The position numbers and the translations under genes are program-made. The notes beneath the pieces were generated by a model. That model ran no database searches. It saw only the letters and a program-made list of their open reading frames with translations, and was not told where the DNA came from. From assembly GCA_002269645.1 (NCBI GenBank), contig NIVC01003409.1:1-24951 (forward strand): DNA of 24,951 nucleotides, read 5' to 3'. Origin of the DNA: Macrostomum lignano (taxonomy: Eukaryota). The stretch's first letter is position 1. Each line of letters begins with the position of its first letter. Of this stretch, positions 196 through 19,765 are shown in pieces.

Positions 196-228
<33 letters not shown>

Positions 229-312: not shown

Positions 313-403
313 ATGCATGTTCATCAGTTATCAGCCTAAAAAAGGCTGTCCCATCAAACAGTAGTAGTTTTCCAACGATTCCTGCAACCCAAGCGCCATC
401 TTC

Positions 404-978: not shown

Positions 979-981
<3 letters not shown>

Positions 982-2524
982 TGCATTAGGCATTTCTTGG
1001 GACAAGCGTGTATAAACTGACCCGTGCTATTAGGACCAAAAATGTGTTGGGCCAGGCCCAATAAGTGCGTCCCGACACTTCCAAAAATGAATTCTATTGA
1101 AATGAAAAAATATTCATTGGAACCGTCTTTCGATTCTCCTTCAAAAATCAATGTCATTTTTTCATATTTTTAATCAAACACGGGGAATCTAATGATTTGC
1201 AGTGTCCTAAGAAGTTTAAAAAATTATGCGAACTGATGGTCTGATCCAACAGAACAATTGGGTCTCAAATCGGAATTCTCGTTTTATTACAATATTTCTT
1301 ACAATATCAAGAAAGTCTACTACAAGTAACAGATAGAGGTTCTCCACAGGGCTGCCAATCGACACTTGAAAGGATCCTGACATTTGGCATCGTGTTTACT
1401 ATAAAATATGAAATAATTTAATAAAGATTTAGAATATTACAATAAGCATACAAACCTTATAGATTTAGTATATTTAGATTTTTGCATAGAAACAGCTAGC
1501 ATCTAAATTCATTAGCTTCCAATTTCACTTATACACGAAACATGGCAAATTAAGGTTACATCCGCCTGTGCCCTCGGCCATTTTAACTGAAATTCTCGTT
1601 TTCAGTCAGCTGCATTAATCTATTTGTCATATGTGAATGGGTATTAACTGACTCAAGTTAGTGACTGGAGGCCATTAACGTAAAGTGACACTTTGAGTGA
1701 GGTAGTTTTCCGGTGGAAATTCTCACAGTCTTATGAAGCGCTTTTAGAGCAAAGAAATAAAGGGCAAAGAAAAACTTTGCATTTCCCGAGAAACAAGGAC
1801 GAGTATTAAGGGAAACGTTTAATCTCTAAGGCTTTAAATGACTTCCTTATTGGCCTGGGTTTGGGCAGCTATACTATGTAGCAAAATTTTTCTAGAATTA
1901 TGATAATTATCGTCTGGTATACTGAAAAGTACTGAGATACAAGAAACTTAAGATGACTGCATGGACTGCTAGCACATGTTTGAGTGTCACTGTCACTGTA
2001 AAGTCTAAATCGATGACTAGTTGGCCCAAAACTAACTACTAGGCCTTCCTGAAAAACAATTCTGCTTATCTTGGATCGTAAAGATAAACCCACGTACAGA
2101 GCAGAAGTGTTAGGACAAGCGTGTACAAGACCCAGGCAATCCCTTACCCAGGCCACGTGTACATTCCTATCGCGGCGGGGGGAAGCGGGGAGGAGAGGCG
2201 GGCGCAAGGGAGTCAGGATAAAGTTTACACTGAAGTTGAGGCCTACAAGAGGAAGAGCCAATTCTAACGGAAAGGTACATGTAGAAGTTCCCTTTGACAA
2301 ACGGCGTACTGCATATGTTCAAACGAATATAATTCATTTACGAGACCTGCACTACACAGACAAAATGTGCCACGTCACAAGAGTTTCCATGCATGACCTG
2401 GCATGAAAAGACTTGGCTAGGAACCATTACACATATGTAAGTAGAATTTAAAATTCTTTTTAAAATTTTATGATTAAATAAAAACTTAACCGGAATTTAC
2501 ATATGTACTTTTCTAAAATTCCAG

Positions 2525-2587
2525 ATACGTTGATATCGATAAGCTACCGTTTTCTTCTATAACAAACAGATTTGCCTTCATTGTCAA
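2525..2587 (+). CDS. Candidate small internal exon (63 nt, phase 2-2)
   Basis: Acceptor ...TTCTAAAATTCCAG|, donor |GTAAGT. Only the phase-2 frame is open (YVDIDKLPFSSITNRFAFIV). An upstream donor |GTAAGT lies at 2437. Confidence 0.35.
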
Positions 2588-2766
2588 GTAAGTCTTGTCT
2601 CGTACTCGTATATGTCGTATTTTTTGTACGTTGAAAAAATAATAAGCAGCCTAGTAATACTCTGAGCTCAGTGAAATATAAGAGAGGCGGCACGATCACC
2701 TTATTTATCAATTAATTTACAACAGCCAGTTGAGCAATCATAAGTAGGCAAAATTTACACTTCTAG

Positions 2767-2863
2767 GAAGAACAAATTTTACTAAAAGTTTCAATCAAAA
2801 CATTTAGGAAAGAAATCTCGCATGACACATCGCCCACAGTACTAGAGACTTGGAGAAATACAT
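2767..2863 (+). CDS. Candidate internal exon (97 nt)
   Basis: Acceptor ...ACACTTCTAG|, donor |GTGAGT. One open frame: EEQILLKVSIKTFRKEISHDTSPTVLETWRNT. In-frame links to its neighbours are not resolved. Confidence 0.35.
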
Positions 2864-2977
2864 GTGAGTTTGCTGGGCAACTAATATAATATATTACTGT
2901 TATAATTCGATAGTCAAATTATTTTTCTACTCAAAGCAGTATTATTACATAACTAAAGAACAGTATAAAATGACAGC

Positions 2978-3208
2978 ATTCTAGAACGAGAAACAAAGCT
3001 TACTGCAAAGGCAAACGCCAAAGAAAAGCAGGGCAGAGTCAGCAACAAAAAAGAAGCTCATCTGATTGGGAAGATGGGCGGTCAGCAAAGAGATAGGATC
3101 TCAGAAAATTGCAACTCCCAGTAACTGAAACTTAATTGCAATAAGTGTTTTGTTTTCTAGGGCATTATTTAAAACAAGCAAGCCTGCCTGCAGTCAGCTA
3201 AGGGCAAA
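2978..3208 (+). CDS. Two candidate exons (~2978-3120 and 3161-3208) joined by a 40-nt intron (3121-3160)
   Basis: Intron GTAACT...TTTTGTTTTCTAG. Splicing removes the in-frame TAA and gives ILERETKLTAKANAKEKQGRVSNKKEAHLIGKMGGQQRDRISENCNSQ-ALFKTSKPACSQLRA. The 48-nt exon is open only in the phase that matches the upstream exon and ends at |GTAAGT. The 5' boundary of the first exon is uncertain. Confidence 0.45.
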
Positions 3209-3422
3209 GTAAGTTGCTGCGGCACTATCGAGAAAGTGAAATTTGTACTCCATCTAACTGACACAAGCAGCACCGTTGGGACAAACTACGAATATTTTAA
3301 TTGTACAGATTTAAATTTTCAGCAATGAAGCATTTATTAGAACAGCGACATTTAAATCTGTTTTCAAACAAATCAGACAGATTTCTCAATAAGTGATTTT
3401 TCTTTTGTGCGCCCACGCACAG

Positions 3423-3605
3423 GTTCGTCCGCATTCAAACTCGCCGCTGCATCCGTCATTTATTCATTGCTGCTCACAAGCCGCAGCAGCAGCAGCAGCA
3501 GCAGCGCTATCCGTGCAGGCAGTCAGTCTATTTGTGAATTTTCTGGTGGATCTGAAGAAAACCCGTCCGGCACAGGATTAAAGAGAAAGAGACGATCTGT
3601 TTTGG
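3423..3605 (+). CDS. First (5'-unique) exon of the array, 183 nt, phase 1-1, poly-Ser version
   Basis: Acceptor TTTTCTTTTGTGCGCCCACGCACAG| (3421-3422), donor G|GTGAGT (3606). Open: xSSAFKLAAASVIYSLLLTSRSSSSSSSAIRAGSQSICEFSGGSEENPSGTGLKRKRRSVL. Confidence 0.55.
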
Positions 3606-5381
3606 GTGAGTATTATCTGCTGTAGAAGTATTGTACACCAGAGTACTTGTGTTACTTGGTAGAGCACAATTCAAAAGCAATGCAACAATCTCAGTGGCAT
3701 TGTTGGGACACAAGCTACAAACGCAATGAATAGTAAACACAGCCCAGCCTAGCTCAAGGCTAGTAATTTGTTGGGCATTTATTGGGACATTGCAGCCAGG
3801 CCTATTTTTTGAACAGCATTTGTTGGGTCGCACTTATTGGGACAATACTGATTCTAATCGCGACTACTTCTGAGTTCTGACTTTTCAAAACAGACCCAGC
3901 ATTAGTTGAACACGTTCTATTAAAGGGTTCCTTTATAGCCTATTAATGATTACTAAAGCAAGCCTATCTTAATTGATTTCTTTTCCTCGCAGATTCTGAA
4001 GTCAGCCACGCCAGCGACATGCCTAAGAGACAAGAATGCGCTTTAACGATCAGCAGCGAGCATTCTGATCTCGCCGCTGCATCCGTCATTTGGTTCACTT
4101 GCTGCTCACAAGCCGCAGCAGCAGCAGCAGCAGCAGCAGCAGCTATCCGTGCAGGCAGTCAGTCTATTTGTGAATTTTCTGGTGGATCTGAAGAAAACCC
4201 GTCCGGCACAGGATTAAAGAGAAAGAGACGATCTGTTTTGGGTGAGTATTATCTGCTGTAGAAGTATTGTACACCAGAGTACTTGTGTTACTTGGTAGAG
4301 CACAATTCAAAAGCAATGCAACAATCTCAGTGGCATTGTTGGGACACAAGCTACAAACGCAATGAATAGTAAACACAGCCCAGCCTAGCTCAAGGCTAGT
4401 AATTTGTTGGGCATTTATTGGGACATTGCAGCCAGGCCTATTTTTTGAACAGCATTTGTTGGGTCGCACTTATTGGGACAATACTGATTCTAATCGCGAC
4501 TACTTCTGAGTTCTGACTTTTCAAAACAGACCCAGCATTAGTTGAACACGTTCTATTAAAGGGTTCCTTTATAGCCTATTAATGATTACTAAAGCAAGCC
4601 TATCTTAATTGATTTCTTTTCCTCGCAGATTCTGAAGTCAGCAACGCCAGCGACATGCCTAAGAGACAAGAATGCGCTTTAACGATCAGCAGCGAGCATT
4701 CTGATCTCGCCGCTGCATCCGTCATTTGGTTCACTTGCTGCTCACAAGCCGCAGCAGCAGCAGCAGCAGCAGCCGCTATCCGTGCAGGCAGTCAGTCTAT
4801 TTGTGAATTTTCTGGTGGATCTGAAGAAAACCCGTCCGGCACAGGATTAAAGAGAAAGAGACGATCTGTTTTGGGTGAGTATTATCTGCTGTAGAAGTAT
4901 TGTACACCAGAGTACTTGTGTTACTTGGTAGAGCACAATTCAAAAGCAATGCAACAATCTCAGTGGCATTGTTGGGACACAAGCTACAAACGCAATGAAT
5001 AGTAAACACAGCCCAGCCTAGCTCAAGGCTAGTAATTTGTTGGGCATTTATTGGGACATTGCAGCCAGGCCTATTTTTTGAACAGCATTTGTTGGGTCGC
5101 ACTTATTGGGACAATACTGATTCTAATCGCGACTACTTCTGAGTTCTGACTTTTCAAAACAGACCCAGCATTAGTTGAACACGTTCTATTAAAGGGTTCC
5201 TTTATAGCCTATTAATGATTACTAAAGCAAGCCTATCTTAATTGATTTCTTTTCCTCGCAGATTCTGAAGTCAGCCACGCCAGCGACATGCCTAAGAGAC
5301 AAGAATGCGCTTTAACGATCAGCAGCGAGCATTCTGATCTCGCCGCTGCATCCGTCATTTGGTTCACTTGCTGCTCACAAG

Positions 5382-5419
<38 letters not shown>

Positions 5420-6026
5420 TATCCGTGCAGGCAGTCAGTCTATTTGTGAATTTTCTGGTGGATCTGAAGAAAACCCGTCCGGCACAGGATTAAAGAGAAA
5501 GAGACGATCTGTTTTGGGTGAGTATTATCTGCTGTAGAAGTATTGTACACCAGAGTACTTGTGTTACTTGGTAGAGCACAATTCAAAAGCAATGCAACAA
5601 TCTCAGTGGCATTGTTGGGACACAAGCTACAAACGCAATGAATAGTAAACACAGCCCAGCCTAGCTCAAGGCTAGTAATTTGTTGGGCATTTATTGGGAC
5701 ATTGCAGCCAGGCCTATTTTTTGAACAGCATTTGTTGGGTCGCACTTATTGGGACAATACTGATTCTAATCGCGACTACTTCTGAGTTCTGACTTTTCAA
5801 AACAGACCCAGCATTAGTTGAACACGTTCTATTAAAGGGTTCCTTTATAGCCTATTAATGATTACTAAAGCAAGCCTATCTTAATTGATTTCTTTTCCTC
5901 GCAGATTCTGAAGTCAGCCACGCCAGCGACATGCCTAAGAGACAAGAATGCGCTTTAACGATCAGCAGCGAGCATTCTGATCTCGCCGCTGCATCCGTCA
6001 TTTGGTTCACTTGCTGCTCACAAGCC

Positions 6027-6068
<42 letters not shown>

Positions 6069-6672
6069 CTATCCGTGCAGGCAGTCAGTCTATTTGTGAA
6101 TTTTCTGGTGGATCTGAAGAAAACCCGTCCGGCACAGGATTAAAGAGAAAGAGACGATCTGTTTTGGGTGAGTATTATCTGCTGTAGAAGTATTGTACAC
6201 CAGAGTACTTGTGTTACTTGGTAGAGCACAATTCAAAAGCAATGCAACAATCTCAGTGGCATTGTTGGGACACAAGCTACAAACGCAATGAATAGTAAAC
6301 ACAGCCCAGCCTAGCTCAAGGCTAGTAATTTGTTGGGCATTTATTGGGACATTGCAGCCAGGCCTATTTTTTGAACAGCATTTGTTGGGTCGCACTTATT
6401 GGGACAATACTGATTCTAATCGCGACTACTTCTGAGTTCTGACTTTTCAAAACAGACCCAGCATTAGTTGAACACGTTCTATTAAAGGGTTCCTTTATAG
6501 CCTATTAATGATTACTAAAGCAAGCCTATCTTAATTGATTTCTTTTCCTCGCAGATTCTGAAGTCAGCACGCCAGCGACATGCCTAAGAGACAAGAATGC
6601 GCTTTAACGATCAGCAGCGAGCATTCTGATCTCGCCGCTGCATCCGTCATTTGGTTCACTTGCTGCTCACAA

Positions 6673-6703
<31 letters not shown>

Positions 6704-8579
6704 CTATCCGTGCAGGCAGTCAGTCTATTTGTGAATTTTCTGGTGGATCTGAAGAAAACCCGTCCGGCACAGGATTAAAGAGAAAGAGACGATCTGTTTT
6801 GGGTGAGTATTATCTGCTGTAGAAGTATTGTACACCAGAGTACTTGTGTTACTTGGTAGAGCACAATTCAAAAGCAATGCAACAATCTCAGTGGCATTGT
6901 TGGGACACAAGCTACAAACGCAATGAATAGTAAACACAGCCCAGCCTAGCTCAAGGCTAGTAATTTGTTGGGCATTTATTGGGACATTGCAGCCAGGCCT
7001 ATTTTTTGAACAGCATTTGTTGGGTCGCACTTATTGGGACAATACTGATTCTAATCGCGACTACTTCTGAGTTCTGACTTTTCAAAACAGACCCAGCATT
7101 AGTTGAACACGTTCTATTAAAGGGTTCCTTTATAGCCTATTAATGATTACTAAAGCAAGCCTATCTTAATTGATTTCTTTTCCTCGCAGATTCTGAAGTC
7201 AGCCACGCCAGCGACATGCCTAAGAGACAAGAATGCGCTTTAACGATCAGCAGCGAGCATTCTGATCTCGCCGCTGCATCCGTCATTTGGTTCACTTGCT
7301 GCTCACAAGCCGCAGCAGCAGCAGCAGCAGCAGCAGCTATCCGTGCAGGCAGTCAGTCTATTTGTGAATTTTCTGGTGGATCTGAAGAAAACCCGTCCGG
7401 CACAGGATTAAAGAGAAAGAGACGATCTGTTTTGGGTGAGTATTATCTGCTGTAGAAGTATTGTACACCAGAGTACTTGTGTTACTTGGTAGAGCACAAT
7501 TCAAAAGCAATGCAACAATCTCAGTGGCATTGTTGGGACACAAGCTACAAACGCAATGAATAGTAAACACAGCCCAGCCTAGCTCAAGGCTAGTAATTTG
7601 TTGGGCATTTATTGGGACATTGCAGCCAGGCCTATTTTTTGAACAGCATTTGTTGGGTCGCACTTATTGGGACAATACTGATTCTAATCGCGACTACTTC
7701 TGAGTTCTGACTTTTCAAAACAGACCCAGCATTAGTTGAACACGTTCTATTAAAGGGTTCCTTTATAGCCTATTAATGATTACTAAAGCAAGCCTATCTT
7801 AATTGATTTCTTTTCCTCGCAGATTCTGAAGTCAGCCACGCCAGCGACATGCCTAAGAGACAAGAATGCGCTTTAACGATCAGCAGCGAGCATTCTGATC
7901 TCGCCGCTGCATCCGTCATTTGGTTCACTTGCTGCTCACAAGCCGCAGCAGCAGCAGCAGCAGCAGCAGCGCTATCCGTGCAGGCAGTCAGTCTATTTGT
8001 GAATTTTCTGGTGGATCTGAAGAAAACCCGTCCGGCACAGGATTAAAGAGAAAGAGACGATCTGTTTTGGGTGAGTATTATCTGCTGTAGAAGTATTGTA
8101 CACCAGAGTACTTGTGTTACTTGGTAGAGCACAATTCAAAAGCAATGCAACAATCTCAGTGGCATTGTTGGGACACAAGCTACAAACGCAATGAATAGTA
8201 AACACAGCCCAGCCTAGCTCAAGGCTAGTAATTTGTTGGGCATTTATTGGGACATTGCAGCCAGGCCTATTTTTTGAACAGCATTTGTTGGGTCGCACTT
8301 ATTGGGACAATACTGATTCTAATCGCGACTACTTCTGAGTTCTGACTTTTCAAAACAGACCCAGCATTAGTTGAACACGTTCTATTAAAGGGTTCCTTTA
8401 TAGCCTATTAATGATTACTAAAGCAAGCCTATCTTAATTGATTTCTTTTCCTCGCAGATTCTGAAGTCAGCCACGCCAGCGACATGCCTAAGAGACAAGA
8501 ATGCGCTTTAACGATCAGCAGCGAGCATTCTGATCTCGCCGCTGCATCCGTCATTTGGTTCACTTGCTGCTCACAAGCC

Positions 8580-8611
<32 letters not shown>

Positions 8612-9854
8612 TATCCGTGCAGGCAGTCAGTCTATTTGTGAATTTTCTGGTGGATCTGAAGAAAACCCGTCCGGCACAGGATTAAAGAGAAAGAGACGAT
8701 CTGTTTTGGGTGAGTATTATCTGCTGTAGAAGTATTGTACACCAGAGTACTTGTGTTACTTGGTAGAGCACAATTCAAAAGCAATGCAACAATCTCAGTG
8801 GCATTGTTGGGACACAAGCTACAAACGCAATGAATAGTAAACACAGCCCAGCCTAGCTCAAGGCTAGTAATTTGTTGGGCATTTATTGGGACATTGCAGC
8901 CAGGCCTATTTTTTGAACAGCATTTGTTGGGTCGCACTTATTGGGACAATACTGATTCTAATCGCGACTACTTCTGAGTTCTGACTTTTCAAAACAGACC
9001 CAGCATTAGTTGAACACGTTCTATTAAAGGGTTCCTTTATAGCCTATTAATGATTACTAAAGCAAGCCTATCTTAATTGATTTCTTTTCCTCGCAGATTC
9101 TGAAGTCAGCCACGCCAGCGACATGCCTAAGAGACAAGAATGCGCTTTAACGATCAGCAGCGAGCATTCTGATCTCGCCGCTGCATCCGTCATTTGGTTC
9201 ACTTGCTGCTCACAAGCCGCAGCAGCAGCAGCAGCAGCAGCAGCAGCTATCCGTGCAGGCAGTCAGTCTATTTGTGAATTTTCTGGTGGATCTGAAGAAA
9301 ACCCGTCCGGCACAGGATTAAAGAGAAAGAGACGATCTGTTTTGGGTGAGTATTATCTGCTGTAGAAGTATTGTACACCAGAGTACTTGTGTTACTTGGT
9401 AGAGCACAATTCAAAAGCAATGCAACAATCTCAGTGGCATTGTTGGGACACAAGCTACAAACGCAATGAATAGTAAACACAGCCCAGCCTAGCTCAAGGC
9501 TAGTAATTTGTTGGGCATTTATTGGGACATTGCAGCCAGGCCTATTTTTTGAACAGCATTTGTTGGGTCGCACTTATTGGGACAATACTGATTCTAATCG
9601 CGACTACTTCTGAGTTCTGACTTTTCAAAACAGACCCAGCATTAGTTGAACACGTTCTATTAAAGGGTTCCTTTATAGCCTATTAATGATTACTAAAGCA
9701 AGCCTATCTTAATTGATTTCTTTTCCTCGCAGATTCTGAAGTCAGCCACGCCAGCGACATGCCTAAGAGACAAGAATGCGCTTTAACGATCAGCAGCGAG
9801 CATTCTGATCTCGCCGCTGCATCCGTCATTTGGTTCACTTGCTGCTCACAAGCC

Positions 9855-9886
<32 letters not shown>

Positions 9887-10496
9887 TATCCGTGCAGGCA
9901 GTCAGTCTATTTGTGAATTTTCTGGTGGATCTGAAGAAAACCCGTCCGGCACAGGATTAAAGAGAAAGAGACGATCTGTTTTGGGTGAGTATTATCTGCT
10001 GTAGAAGTATTGTACACCAGAGTACTTGTGTTACTTGGTAGAGCACAATTCAAAAGCAATGCAACAATCTCAGTGGCATTGTTGGGACACAAGCTACAAA
10101 CGCAATGAATAGTAAACACAGCCCAGCCTAGCTCAAGGCTAGTAATTTGTTGGGCATTTATTGGGACATTGCAGCCAGGCCTATTTTTTGAACAGCATTT
10201 GTTGGGTCGCACTTATTGGGACAATACTGATTCTAATCGCGACTACTTCTGAGTTCTGACTTTTCAAAACAGACCCAGCATTAGTTGAACACGTTCTATT
10301 AAAGGGTTCCTTTATAGCCTATTAATGATTACTAAAGCAAGCCTATCTTAATTGATTTCTTTTCCTCGCAGATTCTGAAGTCAGCCACGCCAGCGACATG
10401 CCTAAGAGACAAGAATGCGCTTTAACGATCAGCAGCGAGCATTCTGATCTCGCCGCTGCATCCGTCATTTGGCTGCTCACTTGCTGCTCACAAGCC

Positions 10497-10532
<36 letters not shown>

Positions 10533-13500
10533 AGCTATCCGTGCAGGCAGTCAGTCTATTTGTCTTTTCTGTGAATGGATCTGAAGAAAACCCGTCCGGC
10601 ACAGGATTAAAGAGAAAGAGACGATCTGTTTTGGGTGAGTATTATCTGCTGTAGAAGTATTGTACACCAGAGTACTTGTGTTACTTGGTAGAGCACAATT
10701 CAAAAGCAATGCAACAATCTCAGTGGCATTGTTGGGACACAAGCTACAAACGCAATGAATAGTAAACACAGCCCAGCCTAGCTCAAGGCTAGTAATTTGT
10801 TGGGCATTTATTGGGACATTGCAGCCAGGCCTATTTTTTGAACAGCATTTGTTGGGTCGCACTTATTGGGACAATACTGATTCTAATCGCGACTACTTCT
10901 GAGTTCTGACTTTTCAAAACAGACCCAGCATTAGTTGAACACGTTCTATTAAAGGGTTCCTTTATAGCCTATTAATGATTACTAAAGCAAGCCTATCTTA
11001 ATTGATTTCTTTTCCTCGCAGATTCTGAAGTCAGCCACGCCAGCGACATGCCTAAGAGACAAGAATGCGCTTTAACGATCAGCAGCGAGCATTCTGATCT
11101 CGCCGCTGCATCCGTCATTTGGTTCACTTGCTGCTCACAAGCCGCAGCAGCAGCAGCAGCAGCAGCAGCAGCTATCCGTGCAGGCAGTCAGTCTATTTGT
11201 GAATTTTCTGGTGGATCTGAAGAAAACCCGTCCGGCACAGGATTAAAGAGAAAGAGACGATCTGTTTTGGGTGAGTATTATCTGCTGTAGAAGTATTGTA
11301 CACCAGAGTACTTGTGTTACTTGGTAGAGCACAATTCAAAAGCAATGCAACAATCTCAGTGGCATTGTTGGGACACAAGCTACAAACGCAATGAATAGTA
11401 AACACAGCCCAGCCTAGCTCAAGGCTAGTAATTTGTTGGGCATTTATTGGGACATTGCAGCCAGGCCTATTTTTTGAACAGCATTTGTTGGGTCGCACTT
11501 ATTGGGACAATACTGATTCTAATCGCGACTACTTCTGAGTTCTGACTTTTCAAAACAGACCCAGCATTAGTTGAACACGTTCTATTAAAGGGTTCCTTTA
11601 TAGCCTATTAATGATTACTAAAGCAAGCCTATCTTAATTGATTTCTTTTCCTCGCAGATTCTGAAGTCAGCCACGCCAGCGACATGCCTAAGAGACAAGA
11701 ATGCGCTTTAACGATCAGCAGCGAGCATTCTGATCTCGCCGCTGCATCCGTCATTTGGTTCACTTGCTGCTCACAAGCCGCAGCAGCAGCAGCAGCAGCA
11801 GCAGCGCTATCCGTGCAGGCAGTCAGTCTATTTGTGAATTTTCTGGTGGATCTGAAGAAAACCCGTCCGGCACAGGATTAAAGAGAAAGAGACGATCTGT
11901 TTTGGGTGAGTATTATCTGCTGTAGAAGTATTGTACACCAGAGTACTTGTGTTACTTGGTAGAGCACAATTCAAAAGCAATGCAACAATCTCAGTGGCAT
12001 TGTTGGGACACAAGCTACAAACGCAATGAATAGTAAACACAGCCCAGCCTAGCTCAAGGCTAGTAATTTGTTGGGCATTTATTGGGACATTGCAGCCAGG
12101 CCTATTTTTTGAACAGCATTTGTTGGGTCGCACTTATTGGGACAATACTGATTCTAATCGCGACTACTTCTGAGTTCTGACTTTTCAAAACAGACCCAGC
12201 ATTAGTTGAACACGTTCTATTAAAGGGTTCCTTTATAGCCTATTAATGATTACTAAAGCAAGCCTATCTTAATTGATTTCTTTTCCTCGCAGATTCTGAA
12301 GTCAGCCACGCCAGCGACATGCCTAAGAGACAAGAATGCGCTTTAACGATCAGCAGCGAGCATTCTGATCTCGCCGCTGCATCCGTCATTTGGTTCACTT
12401 GCTGCTCACAAGCCGCAGCAGCAGCAGCAGCAGCAGCAGCAGCTATCCGTGCAGGCAGTCAGTCTATTTGTGAATTTTCTGGTGGATCTGAAGAAAACCC
12501 GTCCGGCACAGGATTAAAGAGAAAGAGACGATCTGTTTTGGGTGAGTATTATCTGCTGTAGAAGTATTGTACACCAGAGTACTTGTGTTACTTGGTAGAG
12601 CACAATTCAAAAGCAATGCAACAATCTCAGTGGCATTGTTGGGACACAAGCTACAAACGCAATGAATAGTAAACACAGCCCAGCCTAGCTCAAGGCTAGT
12701 AATTTGTTGGGCATTTATTGGGACATTGCAGCCAGGCCTATTTTTTGAACAGCATTTGTTGGGTCGCACTTATTGGGACAATACTGATTCTAATCGCGAC
12801 TACTTCTGAGTTCTGACTTTTCAAAACAGACCCAGCATTAGTTGAACACGTTCTATTAAAGGGTTCCTTTATAGCCTATTAATGATTACTAAAGCAAGCC
12901 TATCTTAATTGATTTCTTTTCCTCGCAGATTCTGAAGTCAGCCACGCCAGCGACATGCCTAAGAGACAAGAATGCGCTTTAACGATCAGCAGCGAGCATT
13001 CTGATCTCGCCGCTGCATCCGTCATTTGGTTCACTTGCTGCTCACAAGCCGCAGCAGCAGCAGCAGCAGCAGCAGCAGCTATCCGTGCAGGCAGTCAGTC
13101 TATTTGTGAATTTTCTGGTGGATCTGAAGAAAACCCGTCCGGCACAGGATTAAAGAGAAAGAGACGATCTGTTTTGGGTGAGTATTATCTGCTGTAGAAG
13201 TATTGTACACCAGAGTACTTGTGTTACTTGGTAGAGCACAATTCAAAAGCAATGCAACAATCTCAGTGGCATTGTTGGGACACAAGCTACAAACGCAATG
13301 AATAGTAAACACAGCCCAGCCTAGCTCAAGGCTAGTAATTTGTTGGGCATTTATTGGGACATTGCAGCCAGGCCTATTTTTTGAACAGCATTTGTTGGGT
13401 CGCACTTATTGGGACAATACTGATTCTAATCGCGACTACTTCTGAGTTCTGACTTTTCAAAACAGACCCAGCATTAGTTGAACACGTTCTATTAAAGGGT

Positions 13501-16500
13501 TCCTTTATAGCCTATTAATGATTACTAAAGCAAGCCTATCTTAATTGATTTCTTTTCCTCGCAGATTCTGAAGTCAGCCACGCCAGCGACATGCCTAAGA
13601 GACAAGAATGCGCTTTAACGATCAGCAGCGAGCATTCTGATCTCGCCGCTGCATCCGTCATTTGGTTCACTTGCTGCTCACAAGCCGCAGCAGCAGCAGC
13701 AGCAGCAGCAGCAGCTATCCGTGCAGGCAGTCAGTCTATTTGTGAATTTTCTGGTGGATCTGAAGAAAACCCGTCCGGCACAGGATTAAAGAGAAAGAGA
13801 CGATCTGTTTTGGGTGAGTATTATCTGCTGTAGAAGTATTGTACACCAGAGTACTTGTGTTACTTGGTAGAGCACAATTCAAAAGCAATGCAACAATCTC
13901 AGTGGCATTGTTGGGACACAAGCTACAAACGCAATGAATAGTAAACACAGCCCAGCCTAGCTCAAGGCTAGTAATTTGTTGGGCATTTATTGGGACATTG
14001 CAGCCAGGCCTATTTTTTGAACAGCATTTGTTGGGTCGCACTTATTGGGACAATACTGATTCTAATCGCGACTACTTCTGAGTTCTGACTTTTCAAAACA
14101 GACCCAGCATTAGTTGAACACGTTCTATTAAAGGGTTCCTTTATAGCCTATTAATGATTACTAAAGCAAGCCTATCTTAATTGATTTCTTTTCCTCGCAG
14201 ATTCTGAAGTCAGCCACGCCAGCGACATGCCTAAGAGACAAGAATGCGCTTTAACGATCAGCAGCGAGCATTCTGATCTCGCCGCTGCATCCGTCATTTG
14301 GTTCACTTGCTGCTCACAAGCCGCAGCAGCAGCAGCAGCAGCAGCAGCAGCTATCCGTGCAGGCAGTCAGTCTATTTGTGAATTTTCTGGTGGATCTGAA
14401 GAAAACCCGTCCGGCACAGGATTAAAGAGAAAGAGACGATCTGTTTTGGGTGAGTATTATCTGCTGTAGAAGTATTGTACACCAGAGTACTTGTGTTACT
14501 TGGTAGAGCACAATTCAAAAGCAATGCAACAATCTCAGTGGCATTGTTGGGACACAAGCTACAAACGCAATGAATAGTAAACACAGCCCAGCCTAGCTCA
14601 AGGCTAGTAATTTGTTGGGCATTTATTGGGACATTGCAGCCAGGCCTATTTTTTGAACAGCATTTGTTGGGTCGCACTTATTGGGACAATACTGATTCTA
14701 ATCGCGACTACTTCTGAGTTCTGACTTTTCAAAACAGACCCAGCATTAGTTGAACACGTTCTATTAAAGGGTTCCTTTATAGCCTATTAATGATTACTAA
14801 AGCAAGCCTATCTTAATTGATTTCTTTTCCTCGCAGATTCTGAAGTCAGCCACGCCAGCGACATGCCTAAGAGACAAGAATGCGCTTTAACGATCAGCAG
14901 CGAGCATTCTGATCTCGCCGCTGCATCCGTCATTTGGTTCACTTGCTGCTCACAAGCCGCAGCAGCAGCAGCAGCAGCAGCTATCCGTGCAGGCAGTCAG
15001 TCTATTTGTGAATTTTCTGGTGGATCTGAAGAAAACCCGTCCGGCACAGGATTAAAGAGAAAGAGACGATCTGTTTTGGGTGAGTATTATCTGCTGTAGA
15101 AGTATTGTACACCAGAGTACTTGTGTTACTTGGTAGAGCACAATTCAAAAGCAATGCAACAATCTCAGTGGCATTGTTGGGACACAAGCTACAAACGCAA
15201 TGAATAGTAAACACAGCCCAGCCTAGCTCAAGGCTAGTAATTTGTTGGGCATTTATTGGGACATTGCAGCCAGGCCTATTTTTTGAACAGCATTTGTTGG
15301 GTCGCACTTATTGGGACAATACTGATTCTAATCGCGACTACTTCTGAGTTCTGACTTTTCAAAACAGACCCAGCATTAGTTGAACACGTTCTATTAAAGG
15401 GTTCCTTTATAGCCTATTAATGATTACTAAAGCAAGCCTATCTTAATTGATTTCTTTTCCTCGCAGATTCTGAAGTCAGCCACGCCAGCGACATGCCTAA
15501 GAGACAAGAATGCGCTTTAACGATCAGCAGCGAGCATTCTGATCTCGCCGCTGCATCCGTCATTTGGTTCACTTGCTGCTCACAAGCCGCAGCAGCAGCA
15601 GCAGCAGCTATCCGTGCAGGCAGTCAGTCTATTTGTGAATTTTCTGGTGGATCTGAAGAAAACCCGTCCGGCACAGGATTAAAGAGAAAGAGACGATCTG
15701 TTTTGGGTGAGTATTATCTGCTGTAGAAGTATTGTACACCAGAGTACTTGTGTTACTTGGTAGAGCACAATTCAAAAGCAATGCAACAATCTCAGTGGCA
15801 TTGTTGGGACACAAGCTACAAACGCATGAATAGTAAACACAGCCCAGCCTAGCTCAAGGCTAGTAATTTGTTGGGCATTTATTGGGACATTGCAGCCAGG
15901 CCTATTTTTTGAACAGCATTTGTTGGGTCGCACTTATTGGGACAATACTGATTCTAATCGCGACTACTTCTGAGTTCTGACTTTTCAAAACAGACCCAGC
16001 ATTAGTTGAACACGTTCTATTAAAGGGTTCCTTTATAGCCTATTAATGATTACTAAAGCAAGCCTATCTTAATTGATTTCTTTTCCTCGCAGATTCTGAA
16101 GTCAGCCACGCCAGCGACATGCCTAAGAGACAAGAATGCGCTTTAACGATCAGCAGCGAGCATTCTGATCTCGCCGCTGCATCCGTCATTTGGTTCACTT
16201 GCTGCTCACAAGCCGCAGCAGCAGCAGCAGCAGCAGCAGCAGCGCTATCCGTGCAGGCAGTCAGTCTATTTGTGAATTTTCTGGTGGATCTGAAGAAAAC
16301 CCGTCCGGCACAGGATTAAAGAGAAAGAGACGATCTGTTTTGGGTGAGTATTATCTGCTGTAGAAGTATTGTACACCAGAGTACTTGTGTTACTTGGTAG
16401 AGCACAATTCAAAAGCAATGCAACAATCTCAGTGGCATTGTTGGGACACAAGCTACAAACGCAATGAATAGTAAACACAGCCCAGCCTAGCTCAAGGCTA

Positions 16501-18114
16501 GTAATTTGTTGGGCATTTATTGGGACATTGCAGCCAGGCCTATTTTTTGAACAGCATTTGTTGGGTCGCACTTATTGGGACAATACTGATTCTAATCGCG
16601 ACTACTTCTGAGTTCTGACTTTTCAAAACAGACCCAGCATTAGTTGAACACGTTCTATTAAAGGGTTCCTTTATAGCCTATTAATGATTACTAAAGCAAG
16701 CCTATCTTAATTGATTTCTTTTCCTCGCAGATTCTGAAGTCAGCCACGCCAGCGACATGCCTAAGAGACAAGAATGCGCTTTAACGATCAGCAGCGAGCA
16801 TTCTGATCTCGCCGCTGCATCCGTCATTTGGTTCACTTGCTGCTCACAAGCCGCAGCAGCAGCAGCAGCAGCTATCCGTGCAGGCAGTCAGTCTATTTGT
16901 GAATTTTCTGGTGGATCTGAAGAAAACCCGTCCGGCACAGGATTAAAGAGAAAGAGACGATCTGTTTTGGGTGAGTATTATCTGCTGTAGAAGTATTGTA
17001 CACCAGAGTACTTGTGTTACTTGGTAGAGCACAATTCAAAAGCAATGCAACAATCTCAGTGGCATTGTTGGGACACAAGCTACAAACGCATTGAATAGTA
17101 AACACAGCCCAGCCTAGCTCAAGGCTAGTAATTTGTTGGGCATTTATTGGGACATTGCAGCCAGGCCTATTTTTTGAACAGCATTTGTTGGGTCGCACTT
17201 ATTGGGACAATACTGATTCTAATCGCGACTACTTCTGAGTTCTGACTTTTCAAAACAGACCCAGCATTAGTTGAACACGTTCTATTAAAGGGTTCCTTTA
17301 TAGCCTATTAATGATTACTAAAGCAAGCCTATCTTAATTGATTTCTTTTCCTCGCAGATTCTGAAGTCAGCCACGCCAGCGACATGCCTAAGAGACAAGA
17401 ATGCGCTTTAACGATCAGCAGCGAGCATTCTGATCTCGCCGCTGCATCCGTCATTTGGTTCACTTGCTGCTCACTTGCTGCTCACAAGCCGCAGCAGCAG
17501 CAGCCGCTATCCGTGCAGGCAGTCAGTCTCTTTGTGAATTTTCTGGTGGATCTGAAGAAAACCCGTCCGGCACAGGATTAAAGAGAAAGAGACGATCTGT
17601 TTTGGGTGAGTATTATCTGCTGTAGAAGTATTGTACACCAGAGTACTTGTGTTACTTGGTAGAGCACAATTGAAAAGCAATGCAACAATCTCAGTGGCAT
17701 TGTTGGGACACAAGCTACAAACGCATTGAATAGTAAACACAGCCCAGCCTAGCTCAAGGCTAGTAATTTGTTGGGCATTTATTGGGACATTGCAGCCAGG
17801 CCTATTTTTTGAACAGCATTTGTTGGGTCGCACTTATTGGGACAATACTGATTCTAATCGCGACTACTTCTGAGTTCTGACTTTTCAAAACAGACCCAGC
17901 ATTAGTTGAACACGTTCTATTAAAGGGTTCCTTTATAGCCTATTAATGATTACTAATGCAAGCCTATCTTAATTGATTTCTTTTCCTCGCAGATTCTGAA
18001 GTCAGCAACGCCAGCGACATGCCTAAGAGACAAGAATGCGCTTTAACGATCAGCAGCGAGCATTCTGATCTCGCCGCTGCATCCGTCATTTGGTTCACTT
18101 GCTGCTCACAAGCC

Positions 18115-18153
<39 letters not shown>

Positions 18154-18174
18154 GCTATCTGTGCAGCAGTCAGT
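3440..18174 (+). repeat. Tandem array of ~636-bp units (23 complete + 1 partial), each one exon plus one intron, with an internal variable (GCA)n tract
   Basis: The same 101-aa antisense ORF recurs at 3528, 4164, 4797 ... 17507 (23 times, spacing ~615-650). Units are near-identical except at and around the CAG tract (about 4-13 triplets). Confidence 0.98.
3993..4241 (+). CDS. Representative repeated symmetric exon (copy 2; 249 nt, phase 1-1). Further copies start at 4629, 5262, 5905, 6555, 7190, 7823, 8458, 9097, 9733, 10372, 11022, 11658, 12293, 12929, 13565, 14201, 14837, 15467, 16093, 16731, 17358
   Basis: Branch-like TACTAAA, then TTGATTTCTTTTCCTCGCAG|AT ... TTG G|GTGAGT. G+AT gives Asp, so copies splice in frame: DSEVSHASDMPKRQECALTISSEHSDLAAASVIWFTCCSQ(A)nIRAGSQSICEFSGGSEENPSGTGLKRKRRSVL. 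The intron is 387 nt (4242-4628). Confidence 0.6.
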
Positions 18175-18177
18175 TAA
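17993..18177 (+). CDS. Last (3'-unique) terminal coding exon of the array
   Basis: Same acceptor and 5' half as the middle copies. It then diverges after the (GCA)12 tract: ...SQAAAAAAAAAAAAAAAICAAVS* (TAA 18175-18177). No GTGAGT donor follows. Confidence 0.5.
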
Positions 18178-18297
18178 TTCATGAGTTTTTTGGCGGAGCT
18201 GGTTATTTTTTTAATTTTCTGAATCGAGAAGCCGATTAACTGCTGTGTGCTTCACTGGAATATTATTTAGAGGACGCATTTTTTGCAGTCTGTTTCT

Positions 18298-18303
18298 AAT
18301 AAA
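18298..18303 (+). promoter_or_regulatory. Candidate polyadenylation signal AATAAA for the exon-array gene
   Basis: AATAAA about 120 nt after the terminal-exon stop. The hexamer alone is weak evidence in AT-rich DNA. Confidence 0.35.
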
Positions 18304-18380
18304 ATCCGGTGCAATGACCGCGGTAGAGCTCTAGCATTTGCTTTTTATAGTATTTGTGTATATTCTTTTTCAAGCTATGC

Positions 18381-18629
18381 TGGAATTGTTGGGACAGCCC
18401 TATCCACACTGGCTATGGTGGAATTGTTGGGACAGCCCTATCCACACTGGCTATGGTTGAATTGTTGGGACAGCCCTATCCACACTGGCTATGGTGGAAT
18501 TGTTGGGACAGCCCTATCCACACTGGCTATGGTTGAATTGTTGGGACAGCCCTATCCACACTGGCTATGGTGGAATTGTTGGGACAGCCCTATCCACACT
18601 GGCTATGGTGAAATTGTTGGGACAGCCCC
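18381..18629 (+). repeat. 38-bp minisatellite, ~6.5 copies (TGGAATTGTTGGGACAGCCCTATCCACACTGGCTATGG)
   Basis: Units start at 18381, 18419, 18457, 18495, 18533, 18571, 18609. First triplets are TGG,TGG,TTG,TGG,TTG,TGG,TGA. Confidence 0.95.
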
Positions 18630-19249
18630 ATACTATAGTGTGTGCTGGCTTCTGCTATAGTGTGGTTCATTTCCGCATCCTTTTACGTAGCATTCTGTGG
18701 GTCCGAATAGCTGACATGTACCTTTTGAGTAATTCTAGTGATTGTGTCATAATCAATAAAGTACATTTTTATGAACAGTGGAGTTTCGCTACAGAATTGT
18801 TTTTTCCCAGTGGCACTAAATGTAGCAAATTTTGTTTATTCAGATCGTAAAATTTTTTTGATATGTGTCAATGTCGTTTGTCTTCGATAACCTTAAAGTC
18901 CCTTGCCATTTACCATCCTGTCTTCTATAATCTATGATCGCTGAAATTATCTGGTGAAATTTGACGCGCTGATATTATTGCCTTAGTGGAATTCAGCAAG
19001 ACACCAGGGTTTTTTAATTCTGTTTTAGACAAGTATACATGTACAATCTGTTGTGAGTTCAATGCACCTCGAAAAATGCTTTCCAACTGTTTTCAGTAAG
19101 CCAAAAGCATGTTGTCAATAAAAATCTATTTGGTGGGTTGAAAATTGCCTGTGTGGGGACGTGTGTGTGTGTGATTTTTCGTGTGTCGGAGCAGTCCCAA
19201 TATGTGCAAGTTTTTGCACACTTGGCCAATAAGTGCCTCGTGCACGTTT

Positions 19250-19765
<516 letters not shown>

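What the first reader, a model, noticed from the sequence alone, without database searches (positions are those of the whole stretch)
3423..18303. A 636-bp 'satellite' that is a 24-fold array of splice-competent symmetric exons: possible repeat polyprotein or cassette-exon diversification gene
Seen in sequence: every unit has a strong acceptor and a G|GTGAGT donor in phase 1-1, so any subset of units can splice in frame (junction G+AT = Asp). The array opens with a unique-5' exon and closes with a unique-3' exon that carries a stop and a downstream AATAAA, which is a complete gene architecture. Established knowledge: symmetric exons tolerate duplication and skipping, and large tandem exon arrays occur in Dscam-type and repeat-protein genes. 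Inference: this may be a recently expanded gene producing ~83-aa repeats, or a large combinatorial isoform set. I do not recognise the peptide as any known domain. The ORF track misleads by showing ATG-started 60-100 aa fragments.
Basis: partly seen in the sequence, partly recalled or inferred. Interest (0 to 1): 0.85.

Follow-up and report, generated by a model that had tools for sequence, protein, structure and literature searches.

The report
Spliced exon array inside flatworm repeat element
The 636-bp repeat is a real, transcribed array of near-identical exon-plus-intron units in the flatworm Macrostomum lignano, but it sits inside a multi-copy, inverted-repeat-bounded element, and about a third of its units here are frame-broken, so it is a young, partly decayed repeat-peptide gene family and not a Dscam-like diversity generator.

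Summary
The array is real. It has 23 GTGAGT donors, 23 CAG acceptors, 24 exon pieces and 387-nt introns, 20 of 23 identical. The window is the whole contig NIVC01003409.1 of Macrostomum lignano (Mlig_3_7). GenBank annotates a partial RNA-seq-derived CDS (BOX15_Mlig029855g16) that uses the predicted SVL|DSEV junction.

Three claims fail:
- Only 14 of 22 internal exons have a length divisible by three, so the fully spliced 6-kb mRNA has no through ORF (longest open stretch 625 aa).
- No ATG serves the main frame in exon 1 or upstream.
- Intact units encode essentially one peptide, so there is no cassette diversity.

The array lies in an element (981-19245) with 38-bp imperfect terminal inverted repeats. 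The same boundaries recur at six or more loci with unrelated flanks, carrying 7 to 23 or more units.

Pooled over 110 exons, substitutions are 9 nonsynonymous (one nonsense, in 11 units) to 2 synonymous. Exons vary as much as introns.

A divergent paralogue keeps the frame, the phase and the PKR and KRKRR sites.

Best reading: a lineage-specific, element-borne, spliced repeat-polyprotein gene family expanded by unequal crossing-over; this copy is decayed. Coding function is unproven.

The parts
981..19245 (+). Whole repeated element: left arm (981-3422), exon-intron array, right arm (about 18321-19245)
   Evidence: The same block, with the same two end points, occurs in loci L001, L002, L005 (both ends) and L006, L007, L009, L012 (one end). 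Flanks beyond the ends are unrelated between loci.
981..1018 (.). Left terminal inverted repeat (GTGCATTAGGCATTTCTTGGGACAAGCGTGTATAAACT)
   Evidence: It aligns to the reverse complement of 19209-19245 with 29 of 38 matches. The score is 29, against 16.2 +/- 2.3 (maximum 26) for 300 shuffles. It starts exactly at the homology boundary and is conserved in every locus that reaches this end.
19209..19245 (.). Right terminal inverted repeat (...CCAATAAGTGCCTCGTGCAC)
   Evidence: Every copy is followed by GTTT(GT)n and preceded on the left by (GT)n-like sequence ending in GTTT.
3423..3605 (+). First exon: 14 unique bases plus the 3' two-thirds of a unit, preceded by the acceptor tttttcttttgtgcgcccacgcacag|
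   Evidence: The main frame is open but has no ATG. The length is a multiple of 3 in all 7 loci; this copy carries a compensated -2/+2 shift that gives a poly-Ser reading. Four database models start exactly here with V[RH]PHSNS.
3993..17605 (+). 22 internal exons (240-263 nt) separated by 387-nt introns. Exons: 3993-4241, 4629-4874, 5262-5517*, 5905-6167*, 6555-6802*, 7190-7435, 7823-8070*, 8458-8709, 9097-9345, 9733-9984, 10372-10634*, 11022-11270, 11658-11905*, 12293-12541, 12929-13177, 13565-13813, 14201-14449, 14837-15079, 15467-15706, 16093-16343*, 16731-16970, 17358-17605* (* = length not divisible by 3)
   Evidence: The intact unit peptide is DSEVSHASDMPKRQECALTISSEHSDLAAASVIWFTCCSQ(A)8-12IRAGSQSICEFSGGSEENPSGTGLKRKRRSVL.
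3606..3992 (+). Representative intron (GTGAGT...CCTCGCAG), 23 copies
   Evidence: 20 of 23 copies are identical. It shows no structured-RNA signal (z = -0.55) and no Rfam match even at E <= 1. It carries 5 TTGGG[ACT][AC]-type motifs, 3 of them exact TTGGGAC.
4101..4143 (+). (GCA)n microsatellite inside each exon (poly-Ala in the main frame); example from unit 1
   Evidence: It is the only hypervariable part of the unit and the source of the length differences and of the GC indels that break the frame.
14278..15531 (+). The only annotated GenBank CDS in this contig: BOX15_Mlig029855g16, partial (156 aa, protein P0047)
   Evidence: One search places it on NIVC01003409.1, a contig of 24951 nt. 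Residues 54-134 match exon 14837-15079 at 100%. The annotation is derived from RNA-seq by StringTie, TACO and TransDecoder.
17993..18320 (+). Terminal exon: the 5' two-thirds of a unit, then unique sequence (3' end approximate)
   Evidence: The main frame ends ...AAICAAVS* at 18175-18177. Other loci carry an alternative intact ending ...AIRAGSQLIDEFSG[RG]AGYFLSF*.
18298..18303 (+). AATAAA polyadenylation signal
   Evidence: It is the first AATAAA after 3400; there is none inside the array.
4055..4057 (+). Alternative acceptor A2 (atcagcag|CGAGCATTCTG), present in all 23 units
   Evidence: It is implied by the junctions RSVL|A|SILISPLHPSF... in 12 database models. These are UniProt/ML2 models only, and I could not check how they were made.
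4200..4202 (+). Alternative donor D2 (AAAACCC|gtccgg), present in all 23 units
   Evidence: It is implied by LKKT|H/P|SEV junctions in 20 models. A2-D2 exons are 135-147 nt, phase 1-1 and open in 15 of the 22 units tested. The same caveat applies.
4157..4159 (+). Alternative donor D3 (GCAGGCA|gtcagt), present in all 23 units
   Evidence: It is implied by AIRAG|N/T|SEV junctions in 5 models. The same caveat applies.
18374..18628 (+). 38-bp minisatellite (6.7 copies) in the right arm; each copy carries TTGTTGGGAC
   Evidence: Copy number differs between loci.

Best explanation
The window is a complete contig of the flatworm Macrostomum lignano. The 636-bp repeat is the internal array of a multi-copy element (981-19245) bounded by imperfect 38-bp terminal inverted repeats.

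Shown: each unit is one exon of about 249 nt plus one 387-nt intron.

Inferred: the array arose when a two-exon segment, whose exons already shared a (GCA)n-containing stretch, was amplified by unequal crossing-over or replication slippage. It is still being resized, because complete and partial copies at other loci hold 7 to 23 or more units.

Shown only through RNA-seq-derived gene models: the array is transcribed and cis-spliced unit to unit at the GTGAGT/CAG sites.

Inferred: transcripts probably begin at the acceptor at 3423, possibly by spliced-leader trans-splicing, and end after the AATAAA at 18298.

The main frame encodes a repeat polyprotein of about 83 aa per unit. Each unit carries a furin-type site (R-K-R-R|S) and a dibasic site (P-K-R|Q). 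Cleavage would release one conserved 14-residue peptide, SVL[D/A]SEVS[H/N]ASDMP, that spans the exon junction, plus one variable peptide of about 60 residues, per unit.

I take the family to be, or recently to have been, a lineage-specific secreted-peptide precursor gene carried on a mobile or dispersed element. The copy in this window is partly decayed. Eight of 22 units are frame-broken and there is no start codon for the main frame, so at best it yields ORFs of 2 to 7 units starting at the Met inside a unit.
For: Array anatomy.

Species and annotation:
- The only relatives among 5.8 billion and 1.8 billion proteins are M. lignano models.
- P0047 maps to a contig of exactly 24951 nt, NIVC01003409.1.
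- The GenBank models come from StringTie, TACO and TransDecoder runs on RNA-seq and use the canonical junction. That junction occurs 46 times in 27 models.

Dispersed element:
- The block end points are identical at loci whose flanks are unrelated.
- The inverted repeat starts exactly at both end points.
- The transcript cluster Mlig029855 has gene numbers up to g39 and lies on ten or more contigs.

Coding hints:
- The main frame is open in exon 1 in 7 of 7 loci, including a compensated -2/+2 shift in this window.
- 74 of 110 pooled units are intact, and the visible internal units are all intact in two arrays, L005 (7 of 7) and L012 (6 of 6).
- The divergent B-type paralogue P0035 is 53% identical per unit. 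It keeps an ORF over four exons, the same junction phase, and near-identical PKR and GLKRKRRSVL blocks (12 of 14 and 11 of 12 residues), while the middle diverges (7 of 30).
Against: There is no sign of purifying selection within the A/C family:
- Variable sites are 10 of 214 in exons and 14 of 387 in introns.
- Exon substitutions are 9 nonsynonymous to 2 synonymous. One is TGG->TAG, carried by 11 of 101 units and dominating the L003 array.
- Indels per nucleotide are equal in exon and intron, about 1e-3.

Other points against:
- No ATG or signal-peptide exon serves the main frame.
- The spliced-leader ATG opens a different frame that stops after 53 codons.
- The fully spliced mRNA of this copy has no through ORF.
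- There is no Pfam domain and no confident fold: the AlphaFold2 single-sequence model has mean pLDDT 42.
- Cysteines are not conserved between the A and B units.
- The target-site duplication is ambiguous, no transposase or empty site was found, and the ends always lie in (GT)n.
- Alternative junctions and the 5' end at 3423 rest on UniProt models whose method I could not verify.
Confidence: 0.55

Rival explanations
1. Non-coding reading. The array is simply the internal satellite of a transposable or dispersed element that happens to be transcribed, perhaps by read-through from host genes, and spliced because the amplified fragment contained an old exon-intron-exon piece of a dead gene. The open frame is a young relic and no protein matters.
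For: - The substitution pattern looks neutral: 9 nonsynonymous to 2 synonymous, a nonsense allele in 11 units, and exons no less variable than introns.
- 33% of pooled units are broken.
- There is no start codon or leader exon.
- Copies sit inside introns of unrelated genes on either strand.
- The family is restricted to one species and has no domain.
- The predicted structure is of low confidence.
Against: - The B-type paralogue keeps the frame, the phase and both basic sites at 53% identity.
- Exon 1 stays in frame in 7 of 7 loci, with one compensated double shift.
- Two arrays show only intact internal units: L005 (7 of 7) and L012 (6 of 6, in a locus that lacks the array's right end).
- Within-family variants are few (11), and many indels may be PacBio errors, so the test for selection has little power.
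Confidence: 0.35
2. One reading: a Dscam-like cassette-exon gene in which choice among 22 alternative exons creates a large set of isoforms.
For: The units are symmetric (phase 1-1) when intact, and each has identical strong splice sites.
Against: - There is nothing to choose between. Intact units in this window encode one peptide apart from poly-Ala length and a single H/N change; across nine loci there are essentially two forms.
- Gene models contain two to five consecutive units, so inclusion is not mutually exclusive.
- No constant exons encoding a larger protein flank the array.
Confidence: 0.02
3. A host-gene array for intronic small RNAs, like the SNORD116/115 or C19MC clusters: the exons are non-coding and the conserved 387-nt intron carries the product.
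For: The introns are more uniform in length than the exons and 20 of 23 are identical. The repeated exon-intron architecture resembles those clusters (from my own knowledge).
Against: - No Rfam family matches at gathering score over the window, or at E <= 1 over two units.
- The intron folds no better than shuffles (z = -0.55).
- Intron identity is explained by the youth of the array, because the exon parts outside the microsatellite are equally uniform.
Confidence: 0.03
4. Assembly artefact: a 1-2-copy locus inflated by the assembler.
For: The contig is small (24951 nt) and comes from a PacBio-based assembly of a very repeat-rich, partly duplicated genome. The exact number of 23 units cannot be verified here.
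Against: Arrays of 7, 9, 10, 14, 16, 17 and 19 units lie on nine other contigs, four of them with both element ends. They differ in microsatellite lengths and variant units, which collapsed or inflated copies would not produce.
Confidence: 0.05

Closest known systems
Tandem-repeat-containing DNA elements that seed satellites (for example the foldback element Tetris of Drosophila virilis, and tandem-repeat-bearing MITE or Helitron-like elements of bivalves) - from my own knowledge
   Same: It has short terminal inverted repeats, a short recurring motif near the ends (here TTGGGAC), an internal head-to-tail array whose copy number differs greatly between insertions, many copies in the genome, and no transposase in the copy.
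   Different: Here the monomer is a complete exon plus intron with working splice sites. The array is spliced into an mRNA with a long open frame. The superfamily is unknown, the target-site duplication is ambiguous (GTTT within GT microsatellite), and mobility is not proven by an empty site.
Intragenic exon-cassette copy-number arrays, for example the kringle IV type 2 repeat of human LPA (5.5-kb units, 1 to more than 40 copies) - from my own knowledge
   Same: Near-identical exon-plus-intron units lie in tandem, symmetric phase lets all copies be spliced in series, copy number is highly variable, and unequal recombination drives the growth.
   Different: LPA units encode a known folded domain in a single-copy gene with a normal start and signal peptide. 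Here the unit has no known fold, a third of the units are frame-broken, no start exon is visible, and the whole gene is repeated at many loci inside an element.
Repeat polyprotein precursors cut at regularly spaced basic sites (nematode polyprotein allergens such as ABA-1, fungal Kex2-processed repeat proteins, multi-copy neuropeptide precursors) - from my own knowledge
   Same: Tandem peptide units in one frame are punctuated by an R-X-K/R-R site and a dibasic site. The short stretch between the sites is the best conserved part between paralogues.
   Different: No N-terminal signal peptide is demonstrable, processing is untested, each unit is a separate exon with the conserved peptide split by the intron, there is no sequence similarity to any of these families, and there is no evidence of selection within the family.
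Dscam-type mutually exclusive exon clusters
   Same: A tandem array of similar exons, each with its own splice sites.
   Different: The exons are identical rather than diversified, several are included together, and no constant exons flank the array.

Membership tests
Dscam-type mutually exclusive cassette-exon array | The alternative exons differ in sequence, so that the choice creates protein diversity | tested here: not met
   13 of the 14 intact units in the window encode the same peptide apart from poly-Ala length. The 74 intact units from nine loci give essentially two forms.
Dscam-type mutually exclusive cassette-exon array | Exactly one exon of the cluster is included per mRNA, between constant exons | tested here: not met
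   Gene models carry two to five consecutive units. No constant coding exons were found in the arms.
Basic-site-processed repeat polyprotein or multi-copy peptide precursor | Tandem peptide units in a single continuous reading frame | tested here: inconclusive
   Runs of up to 6 intact units occur in the window, and the 7 internal units of L005 are all intact. The full spliced mRNA of this copy has no through ORF; its longest open stretch is 625 aa.
Basic-site-processed repeat polyprotein or multi-copy peptide precursor | Regularly spaced proprotein-convertase sites (R-X-K/R-R or KR) | tested here: met
   Every intact unit has L-K-R-K-R-R|S and P-K-R|Q. Both are conserved in the 53%-identical B-type paralogue.
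Basic-site-processed repeat polyprotein or multi-copy peptide precursor | An N-terminal signal peptide after a start codon | tested here: not met
   No ATG serves the main frame in exon 1 or any upstream phase-1 exon. The only candidates are indirect: the Met inside unit 2 followed by the Ala-rich stretch, or the spliced-leader ATG plus alternative donor D2.
Basic-site-processed repeat polyprotein or multi-copy peptide precursor | Demonstrated cleavage products | not testable with these tools
   This needs proteomics or peptidomics.
Class II (terminal-inverted-repeat) transposable element, non-autonomous | Terminal inverted repeats at the exact ends of the repeated block | tested here: met
   A 38-bp repeat with 29 matches starts at both homology end points. 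Its score of 29 exceeds all 300 shuffles (maximum 26). It is conserved in all loci.
Class II (terminal-inverted-repeat) transposable element, non-autonomous | Copies at multiple unrelated genomic sites | tested here: met
   There are six distinct left flanks, and seven right flanks that collapse to six distinct ones because L007 and L011 are the same. No other pair is homologous apart from one 247-bp repeat shared by L002 and L006. This gives a minimum of six sites.
Class II (terminal-inverted-repeat) transposable element, non-autonomous | A target-site duplication of fixed length that differs between insertions | tested here: inconclusive
   Every copy is flanked by ...GTTT| and |GTTT... within (GT)n-like sequence. 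The same 4 nt at all sites cannot be told apart from element sequence or a strict target preference.
Class II (terminal-inverted-repeat) transposable element, non-autonomous | An empty site or an autonomous partner with a transposase | not testable with these tools
   No eukaryotic genome collection was available. No transposase-like ORF or Pfam hit was found in the arms. The attempt to reach a homeologous myosin locus failed.
Satellite or tandem-repeat DNA | Head-to-tail monomers of fixed length with high identity | tested here: met
   There are 23 periods of 627-650 bp, about 99-100% identical outside the (GCA)n tract.
Intronic small-RNA host-gene array (SNORD116/115 or C19MC type) | A structured small RNA (snoRNA or miRNA hairpin) in each intron | tested here: not met
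   There are no Rfam hits and the intron fold gives z = -0.55.
Spliced-leader trans-spliced mRNA of M. lignano | SL-containing reads that map to the acceptor at the 5' end of exon 1 | not testable with these tools
   The evidence is only indirect. There is an AG acceptor with a pyrimidine tract at 3423, four models start exactly there, and the SL ends in ATG. The acceptor does not match the enriched [T/C]TNCAG motif.

The most novel reading that the evidence does not exclude
A mobile element carries its own intron-rich gene, a peptide-precursor cassette whose dose is set by unequal crossing-over (7 to 23 or more units). It is expressed wherever it lands because its first exon opens with a spliced-leader acceptor. 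Each unit releases a conserved 14-residue peptide, SVL[D/A]SEVS[H/N]ASDMP, between the RKRR and KR sites. In addition, each unit may be read in two overlapping frames through paired alternative splice sites. The long form uses A1-D1 (83 aa, poly-Ala). The short form uses A2-D2 (45-49 aa, poly-Gln, hydrophobic LSVQAVSLFVNFLV). Both forms are phase 1-1.
Probability: 0.12. Interest if true: 0.75.

Novelty: new variant of a known kind. Interest (0 to 1): 0.45.

Why it matters
If the family is functional, it would be a rare case of a spliced, multi-exon peptide-precursor gene that travels on a repeat element and changes its dose by tandem exon amplification. That would give a concrete view of how orphan secreted-peptide genes arise and expand in a regenerating flatworm model.

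If it is not functional, it is still a clean example of an 'exonised satellite': a tandem repeat whose every unit is recognised by the spliceosome. Such arrays inflate gene counts. Here 40 or more partial 'hypothetical protein' models come from one repeat family. They also place strong splice sites inside introns of host genes such as a myosin heavy chain and a TIR-domain gene. Either way, annotators of M. lignano should treat the Mlig029855, Mlig026960 and Mlig003618 models as one repeat-borne family.

Tried and rejected
- Known domains. Pfam gave nothing above cut-off for the unit, the SL-ATG fusion, P0001, P0035 or the ORFs in the arms. The PF14442 hit on P0001 sits at the cut-off with no individual stretch passing, so I treat it as spurious.
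- Remote homologues. An exhaustive phmmer search of 1.8 billion representatives found only M. lignano relatives; the one outside hit (P0033, a bacterial repeat protein, E = 2e-5) is spurious.
- Structure. The AlphaFold2 model of P0001 has mean pLDDT 42, so I ran no fold search.
- Structured RNA. Rfam, tRNA scan and intron folding were all negative.
- Minus-strand ORF. The 101-aa ORF repeated in each unit has only sub-threshold Pfam hits, spans intron and exon, and I regard it as mechanical.
- Expression data. The gene identifiers Mlig029855, Mlig026960 and Mlig003618 do not occur in the searchable literature or in the supplements of two M. lignano papers.
- B-type DNA for dN/dS. P0034 and P0035 are not on record with contigs, and no GenBank B-type model was found.
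- Empty-site test through a homeologous myosin gene. The protein search returned no M. lignano myosin.
- Method behind the UniProt (ML2) gene models. The paper is not held, so the alternative junctions A2, D2 and D3 and the 5' end at 3423 remain unverified.
- B-unit middle versus the +1 frame of the A unit. The resemblance is only weakly above shuffles (score 29 against 20.1 +/- 3.7), so it is a hint and not a result.

Full report
**What is in the sequence**

The repeat finder gives 23 copies spaced 627-650 bp apart, mode 636. Exact-string searches find 23 donors (TTTTGG|GTGAGT) and 23 acceptors (CAG|ATTCTGAAG). These define three kinds of exon:
- a first exon (3423-3605) that matches the 3' two-thirds of a unit;
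- 22 full internal exons of 240-263 nt;
- a terminal exon from 17993 that matches the 5' two-thirds of a unit and then diverges.

The 23 introns are 386-387 nt long and 20 are identical. Almost all length variation lies in a (GCA)n microsatellite inside the exon. The terminal exon has a main-frame TAA at 18175-18177. The first AATAAA after position 3400 is at 18298.

**Where the description fails**

Only 14 of the 22 internal exons have a length divisible by three. The other eight start at 5262, 5905, 6555, 7823, 10372, 11658, 16093 and 17358. They are shifted, mostly by a 2-nt GC indel at the 3' end of the microsatellite, and run into stops.

Joining all 24 exons gives a 6.0-kb mRNA with 50-63 stops in every frame. 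Its longest open stretch is 625 aa, covering exons 14-21.

Exon 1 has no ATG in the main frame. The suggested upstream exon 3161-3208 puts a stop into that frame. No ATG-started phase-1 exon with a GTRAG donor exists anywhere in the 2.4 kb upstream.

The claims that 'any subset splices in frame' and that this is 'a complete gene architecture' therefore do not hold for this copy. One caveat applies: the contig comes from a PacBio-based assembly, so some single-base shifts could be errors.

**Whose genome, and is it expressed**

A two-unit peptide query found only Macrostomum lignano proteins, at 90-97% identity. An exhaustive phmmer search of 1.8 billion representatives added nothing outside this species.

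Cluster look-up showed that P0047 (BOX15_Mlig029855g16, partial) lies on a contig of exactly 24951 nt, NIVC01003409.1 of assembly Mlig_3_7, at 14278-15531. The window is that whole contig.

The GenBank models of this assembly are built from RNA-seq with StringTie and TACO, from mapped de novo transcripts, and from TransDecoder. All of them that I retrieved join units at the predicted junction...KRKRRSVL|D/A-SEVS.... Transcription and splicing at the canonical sites thus have indirect experimental support. I could not look at reads.

Loci fetched for related gene models share with the window a block that starts at 981 and ends at 19245. Beyond those two points the flanks are unrelated, both to the window and to each other. 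There are six distinct left flanks. There are seven right flanks, which collapse to six because two are the same. This gives at least six insertion sites.

The first 38 bp of the block are an imperfect inverted repeat of the last 37 bp. There are 29 matches, and the score of 29 exceeds all 300 shuffles, whose maximum was 26. Both ends are conserved in every copy.

Every copy lies in (GT)n-like sequence and has GTTT directly outside each end. A target-site duplication therefore cannot be assigned cleanly.

The copies carry 7, 9, 10 and 23 donors where both ends are visible, and 14-19 where one end is cut off. The transcript cluster Mlig029855 has gene numbers up to g39 and lies on ten or more contigs.

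One copy sits in a 15-kb intron of a myosin heavy-chain gene on the same strand. Another sits inside a TIR-domain gene model on the opposite strand.

The arms have no transposase-like ORF or Pfam hit.

A motif, TTGGGAC, recurs on the plus strand:
- 3 exact copies (5 counting TTGGGC/TTGGGT variants) in each intron;
- 7 times in the 38-bp minisatellite of the right arm;
- once in the left inverted repeat, once at 3276, and once inverted near the right end.

The wider pattern TTRTTGGGWC has 99 matches against 0.11 expected.

The simplest reading is a non-autonomous, inverted-repeat-bounded element with an internal tandem array. Mobility itself is inferred, not shown.

**Is the frame under selection?**

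I pooled 110 internal exons and 118 introns from nine non-redundant loci.
- Outside the microsatellite, 10 of 214 exon positions vary, against 14 of 387 intron positions.
- The 11 exon substitutions comprise 9 nonsynonymous and 2 synonymous changes.
- One nonsynonymous change is TGG->TAG. It is carried by 11 of 101 units and fills most of the L003 array.
- Indel frequency per nucleotide is the same in exon and intron, about 1e-3.
- 74 of 110 units are intact. The internal units visible in L005 (7 of 7) and L012 (6 of 6) are all intact.

This is the pattern of a very young, neutrally drifting or error-laden array. It gives no positive evidence for coding, but with only 11 variants it cannot exclude it.

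Several observations point the other way.
- Exon 1 is a multiple of 3 and open in the main frame in 7 of 7 loci. The window's copy achieves this through a compensated -2/+2 shift.
- A divergent paralogue known only from UniProt (P0035, the 'B type') is 53% identical per unit. It keeps an ORF across four exons, the same junction phase, and near-identical blocks at both exon ends: ASxVSNASDMPKR (12 of 14 residues) and GxGLKRKRRSVL (11 of 12). The middle of the unit, cysteines included, diverges (7 of 30).
- The conserved stretch is continuous across the splice junction. It is bounded by R-K-R-R| and |K-R. A peptide precursor would show this pattern if its product were the 14-mer SVL[D/A]SEVS[H/N]ASDMP.

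I could not obtain B-type DNA, so dN/dS could not be computed.

**Start of translation**

The M. lignano spliced leader ends in ATG. Position 3423 is an AG acceptor preceded by a pyrimidine tract. Four database models start exactly there.

If the leader is added, its ATG opens a different frame: MV[RH]PHSNSPLHPSF...LSVQAVSLFVNFLVDLKKTR[PL]AQD*. With the canonical donor this frame stops after 53 codons in this window's copy. It would enter the main frame only through an alternative donor, D2 (ACCC|GTCCGG).

The main frame otherwise has to start at the Met inside unit 2 (MPKRQEC...).

Alternative sites A2, D2 and D3 all have AG or GT in every unit. The A2-D2 short exon is also phase 1-1 and open in 15 of the 22 units tested. 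But these junctions appear only in UniProt models from the older ML2 assembly, and I could not check how those were made. An ab initio predictor keeping frames open would produce the same picture. I therefore treat trans-splicing and dual-frame use as hypotheses.

**Other readings tested**

- The intron carries no recognisable RNA family and folds no better than shuffles. This argues against a snoRNA or miRNA host array.
- The unit has no Pfam domain. The AlphaFold2 single-sequence model is of low confidence, with pLDDT 42.
- A Dscam-like role is excluded, because the intact units are the same peptide and models include several units in series.
- An assembly artefact is unlikely, given nine further contigs with arrays that differ in unit variants and microsatellite lengths. 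The exact count of 23 remains unverified.

**Verdict**

The thing is a recently amplified exon-plus-intron cassette array. It most likely grew by unequal crossing-over between two exons that shared the (GCA)n stretch. It lies inside a multi-copy inverted-repeat-bounded element of M. lignano and is transcribed and spliced.

It most likely belongs to a lineage-specific gene family for a basic-site-punctuated repeat polyprotein. The copy in this window is partly decayed and lacks a visible start.

My confidence in the structural statements is about 0.85. My confidence that some member of the family makes a functional protein is about 0.45. The non-coding 'exonised satellite' reading is the main rival.

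It is a new variant of known kinds (tandem-repeat-bearing elements, and exon-cassette copy-number arrays) rather than something categorically new. It is already present in GenBank as partial hypothetical proteins, but I found no description of it in the literature I could search.

Noticed in passing
window 3700-17843 (introns), 18386-18623, 997, 3276, 19194: The motif TTGGGAC (wider pattern TTRTTGGGWC: 99 matches, all on the plus strand, 0.11 expected) occurs 3 times exactly (5 counting TTGGGC/TTGGGT variants) in each intron, 7 times in the 38-bp minisatellite, once in the left inverted repeat, once upstream of exon 1, and once inverted near the right end. It looks like subterminal protein-binding repeats of the element.
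   Followed up: partly
window 20674-21907: A 32-bp minisatellite (38.6 copies, 92% matches) lies outside the element. It produces long artefactual ORFs in all three plus-strand frames.
   Followed up: no
window 1-313 and 19251-19765: (GACA)n at the left contig end and its reverse complement (TGTC)n (about 131 copies) directly after the element's right-hand (GT)n. A GACA tract also lies about 4 kb downstream of the L001 copy.
   Followed up: partly
window 23999-24290: Degenerate 16-bp repeats (TTTAGGCGATATGAAA and its complement) in an AT-rich stretch near the right contig end.
   Followed up: no
L003:1871-12147: In this copy 9 of 16 internal units carry the same TGG->TAG nonsense change, so the change spread within one array by homogenisation. 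The array runs off the contig end.
   Followed up: partly
L005:5447-14783; L002:6208-16038: One element copy sits in a 15-kb intron of a myosin heavy-chain gene on the same strand. Another sits inside a 981-aa TIR_2-domain gene model on the opposite strand. Strong splice sites inside host introns could disturb host splicing.
   Followed up: partly
proteins P0034 and P0035 (UniProt A0A1I8FV09, A0A1I8HX90): A divergent 'B-type' array of the same family, with unit ASKVSNASDMPKREDSTSTINSEHSDIADALATSCLLAAQEQQQTLLMQTGCSQSIDDLSCGAKDNSSGKGLKRKRRSVL. The middle of the unit weakly resembles the +1 frame of the A unit (score 29 against 20 +/- 3.7 for shuffles).
   Followed up: partly
window 4057-4200 and the equivalent in every unit: A shorter exon form using alternative acceptor A2 and donor D2 (135-147 nt; poly-Gln and the hydrophobic LSVQAVSLFVNFLV) is also phase 1-1. 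It is open in 15 of the 22 units tested: the 14 intact long-form units plus 6555-6802. It is seen only in UniProt/ML2 models.
   Followed up: partly
window 3528-17833, minus strand: A 101-aa GTG-started ORF recurs in nearly every unit on the minus strand, spanning intron and exon 3' end. It has only sub-threshold Pfam hits and is probably mechanical.
   Followed up: partly
window 18160-18180 versus L001:11280-, L006, L007: There are two terminal-exon types. C-type arrays end ...AIRAGSQLIDEFSG[RG]AGYFLSF*. A-type arrays, this window included, have a 1-nt deletion and end early at ...AICAAVS*.
   Followed up: yes
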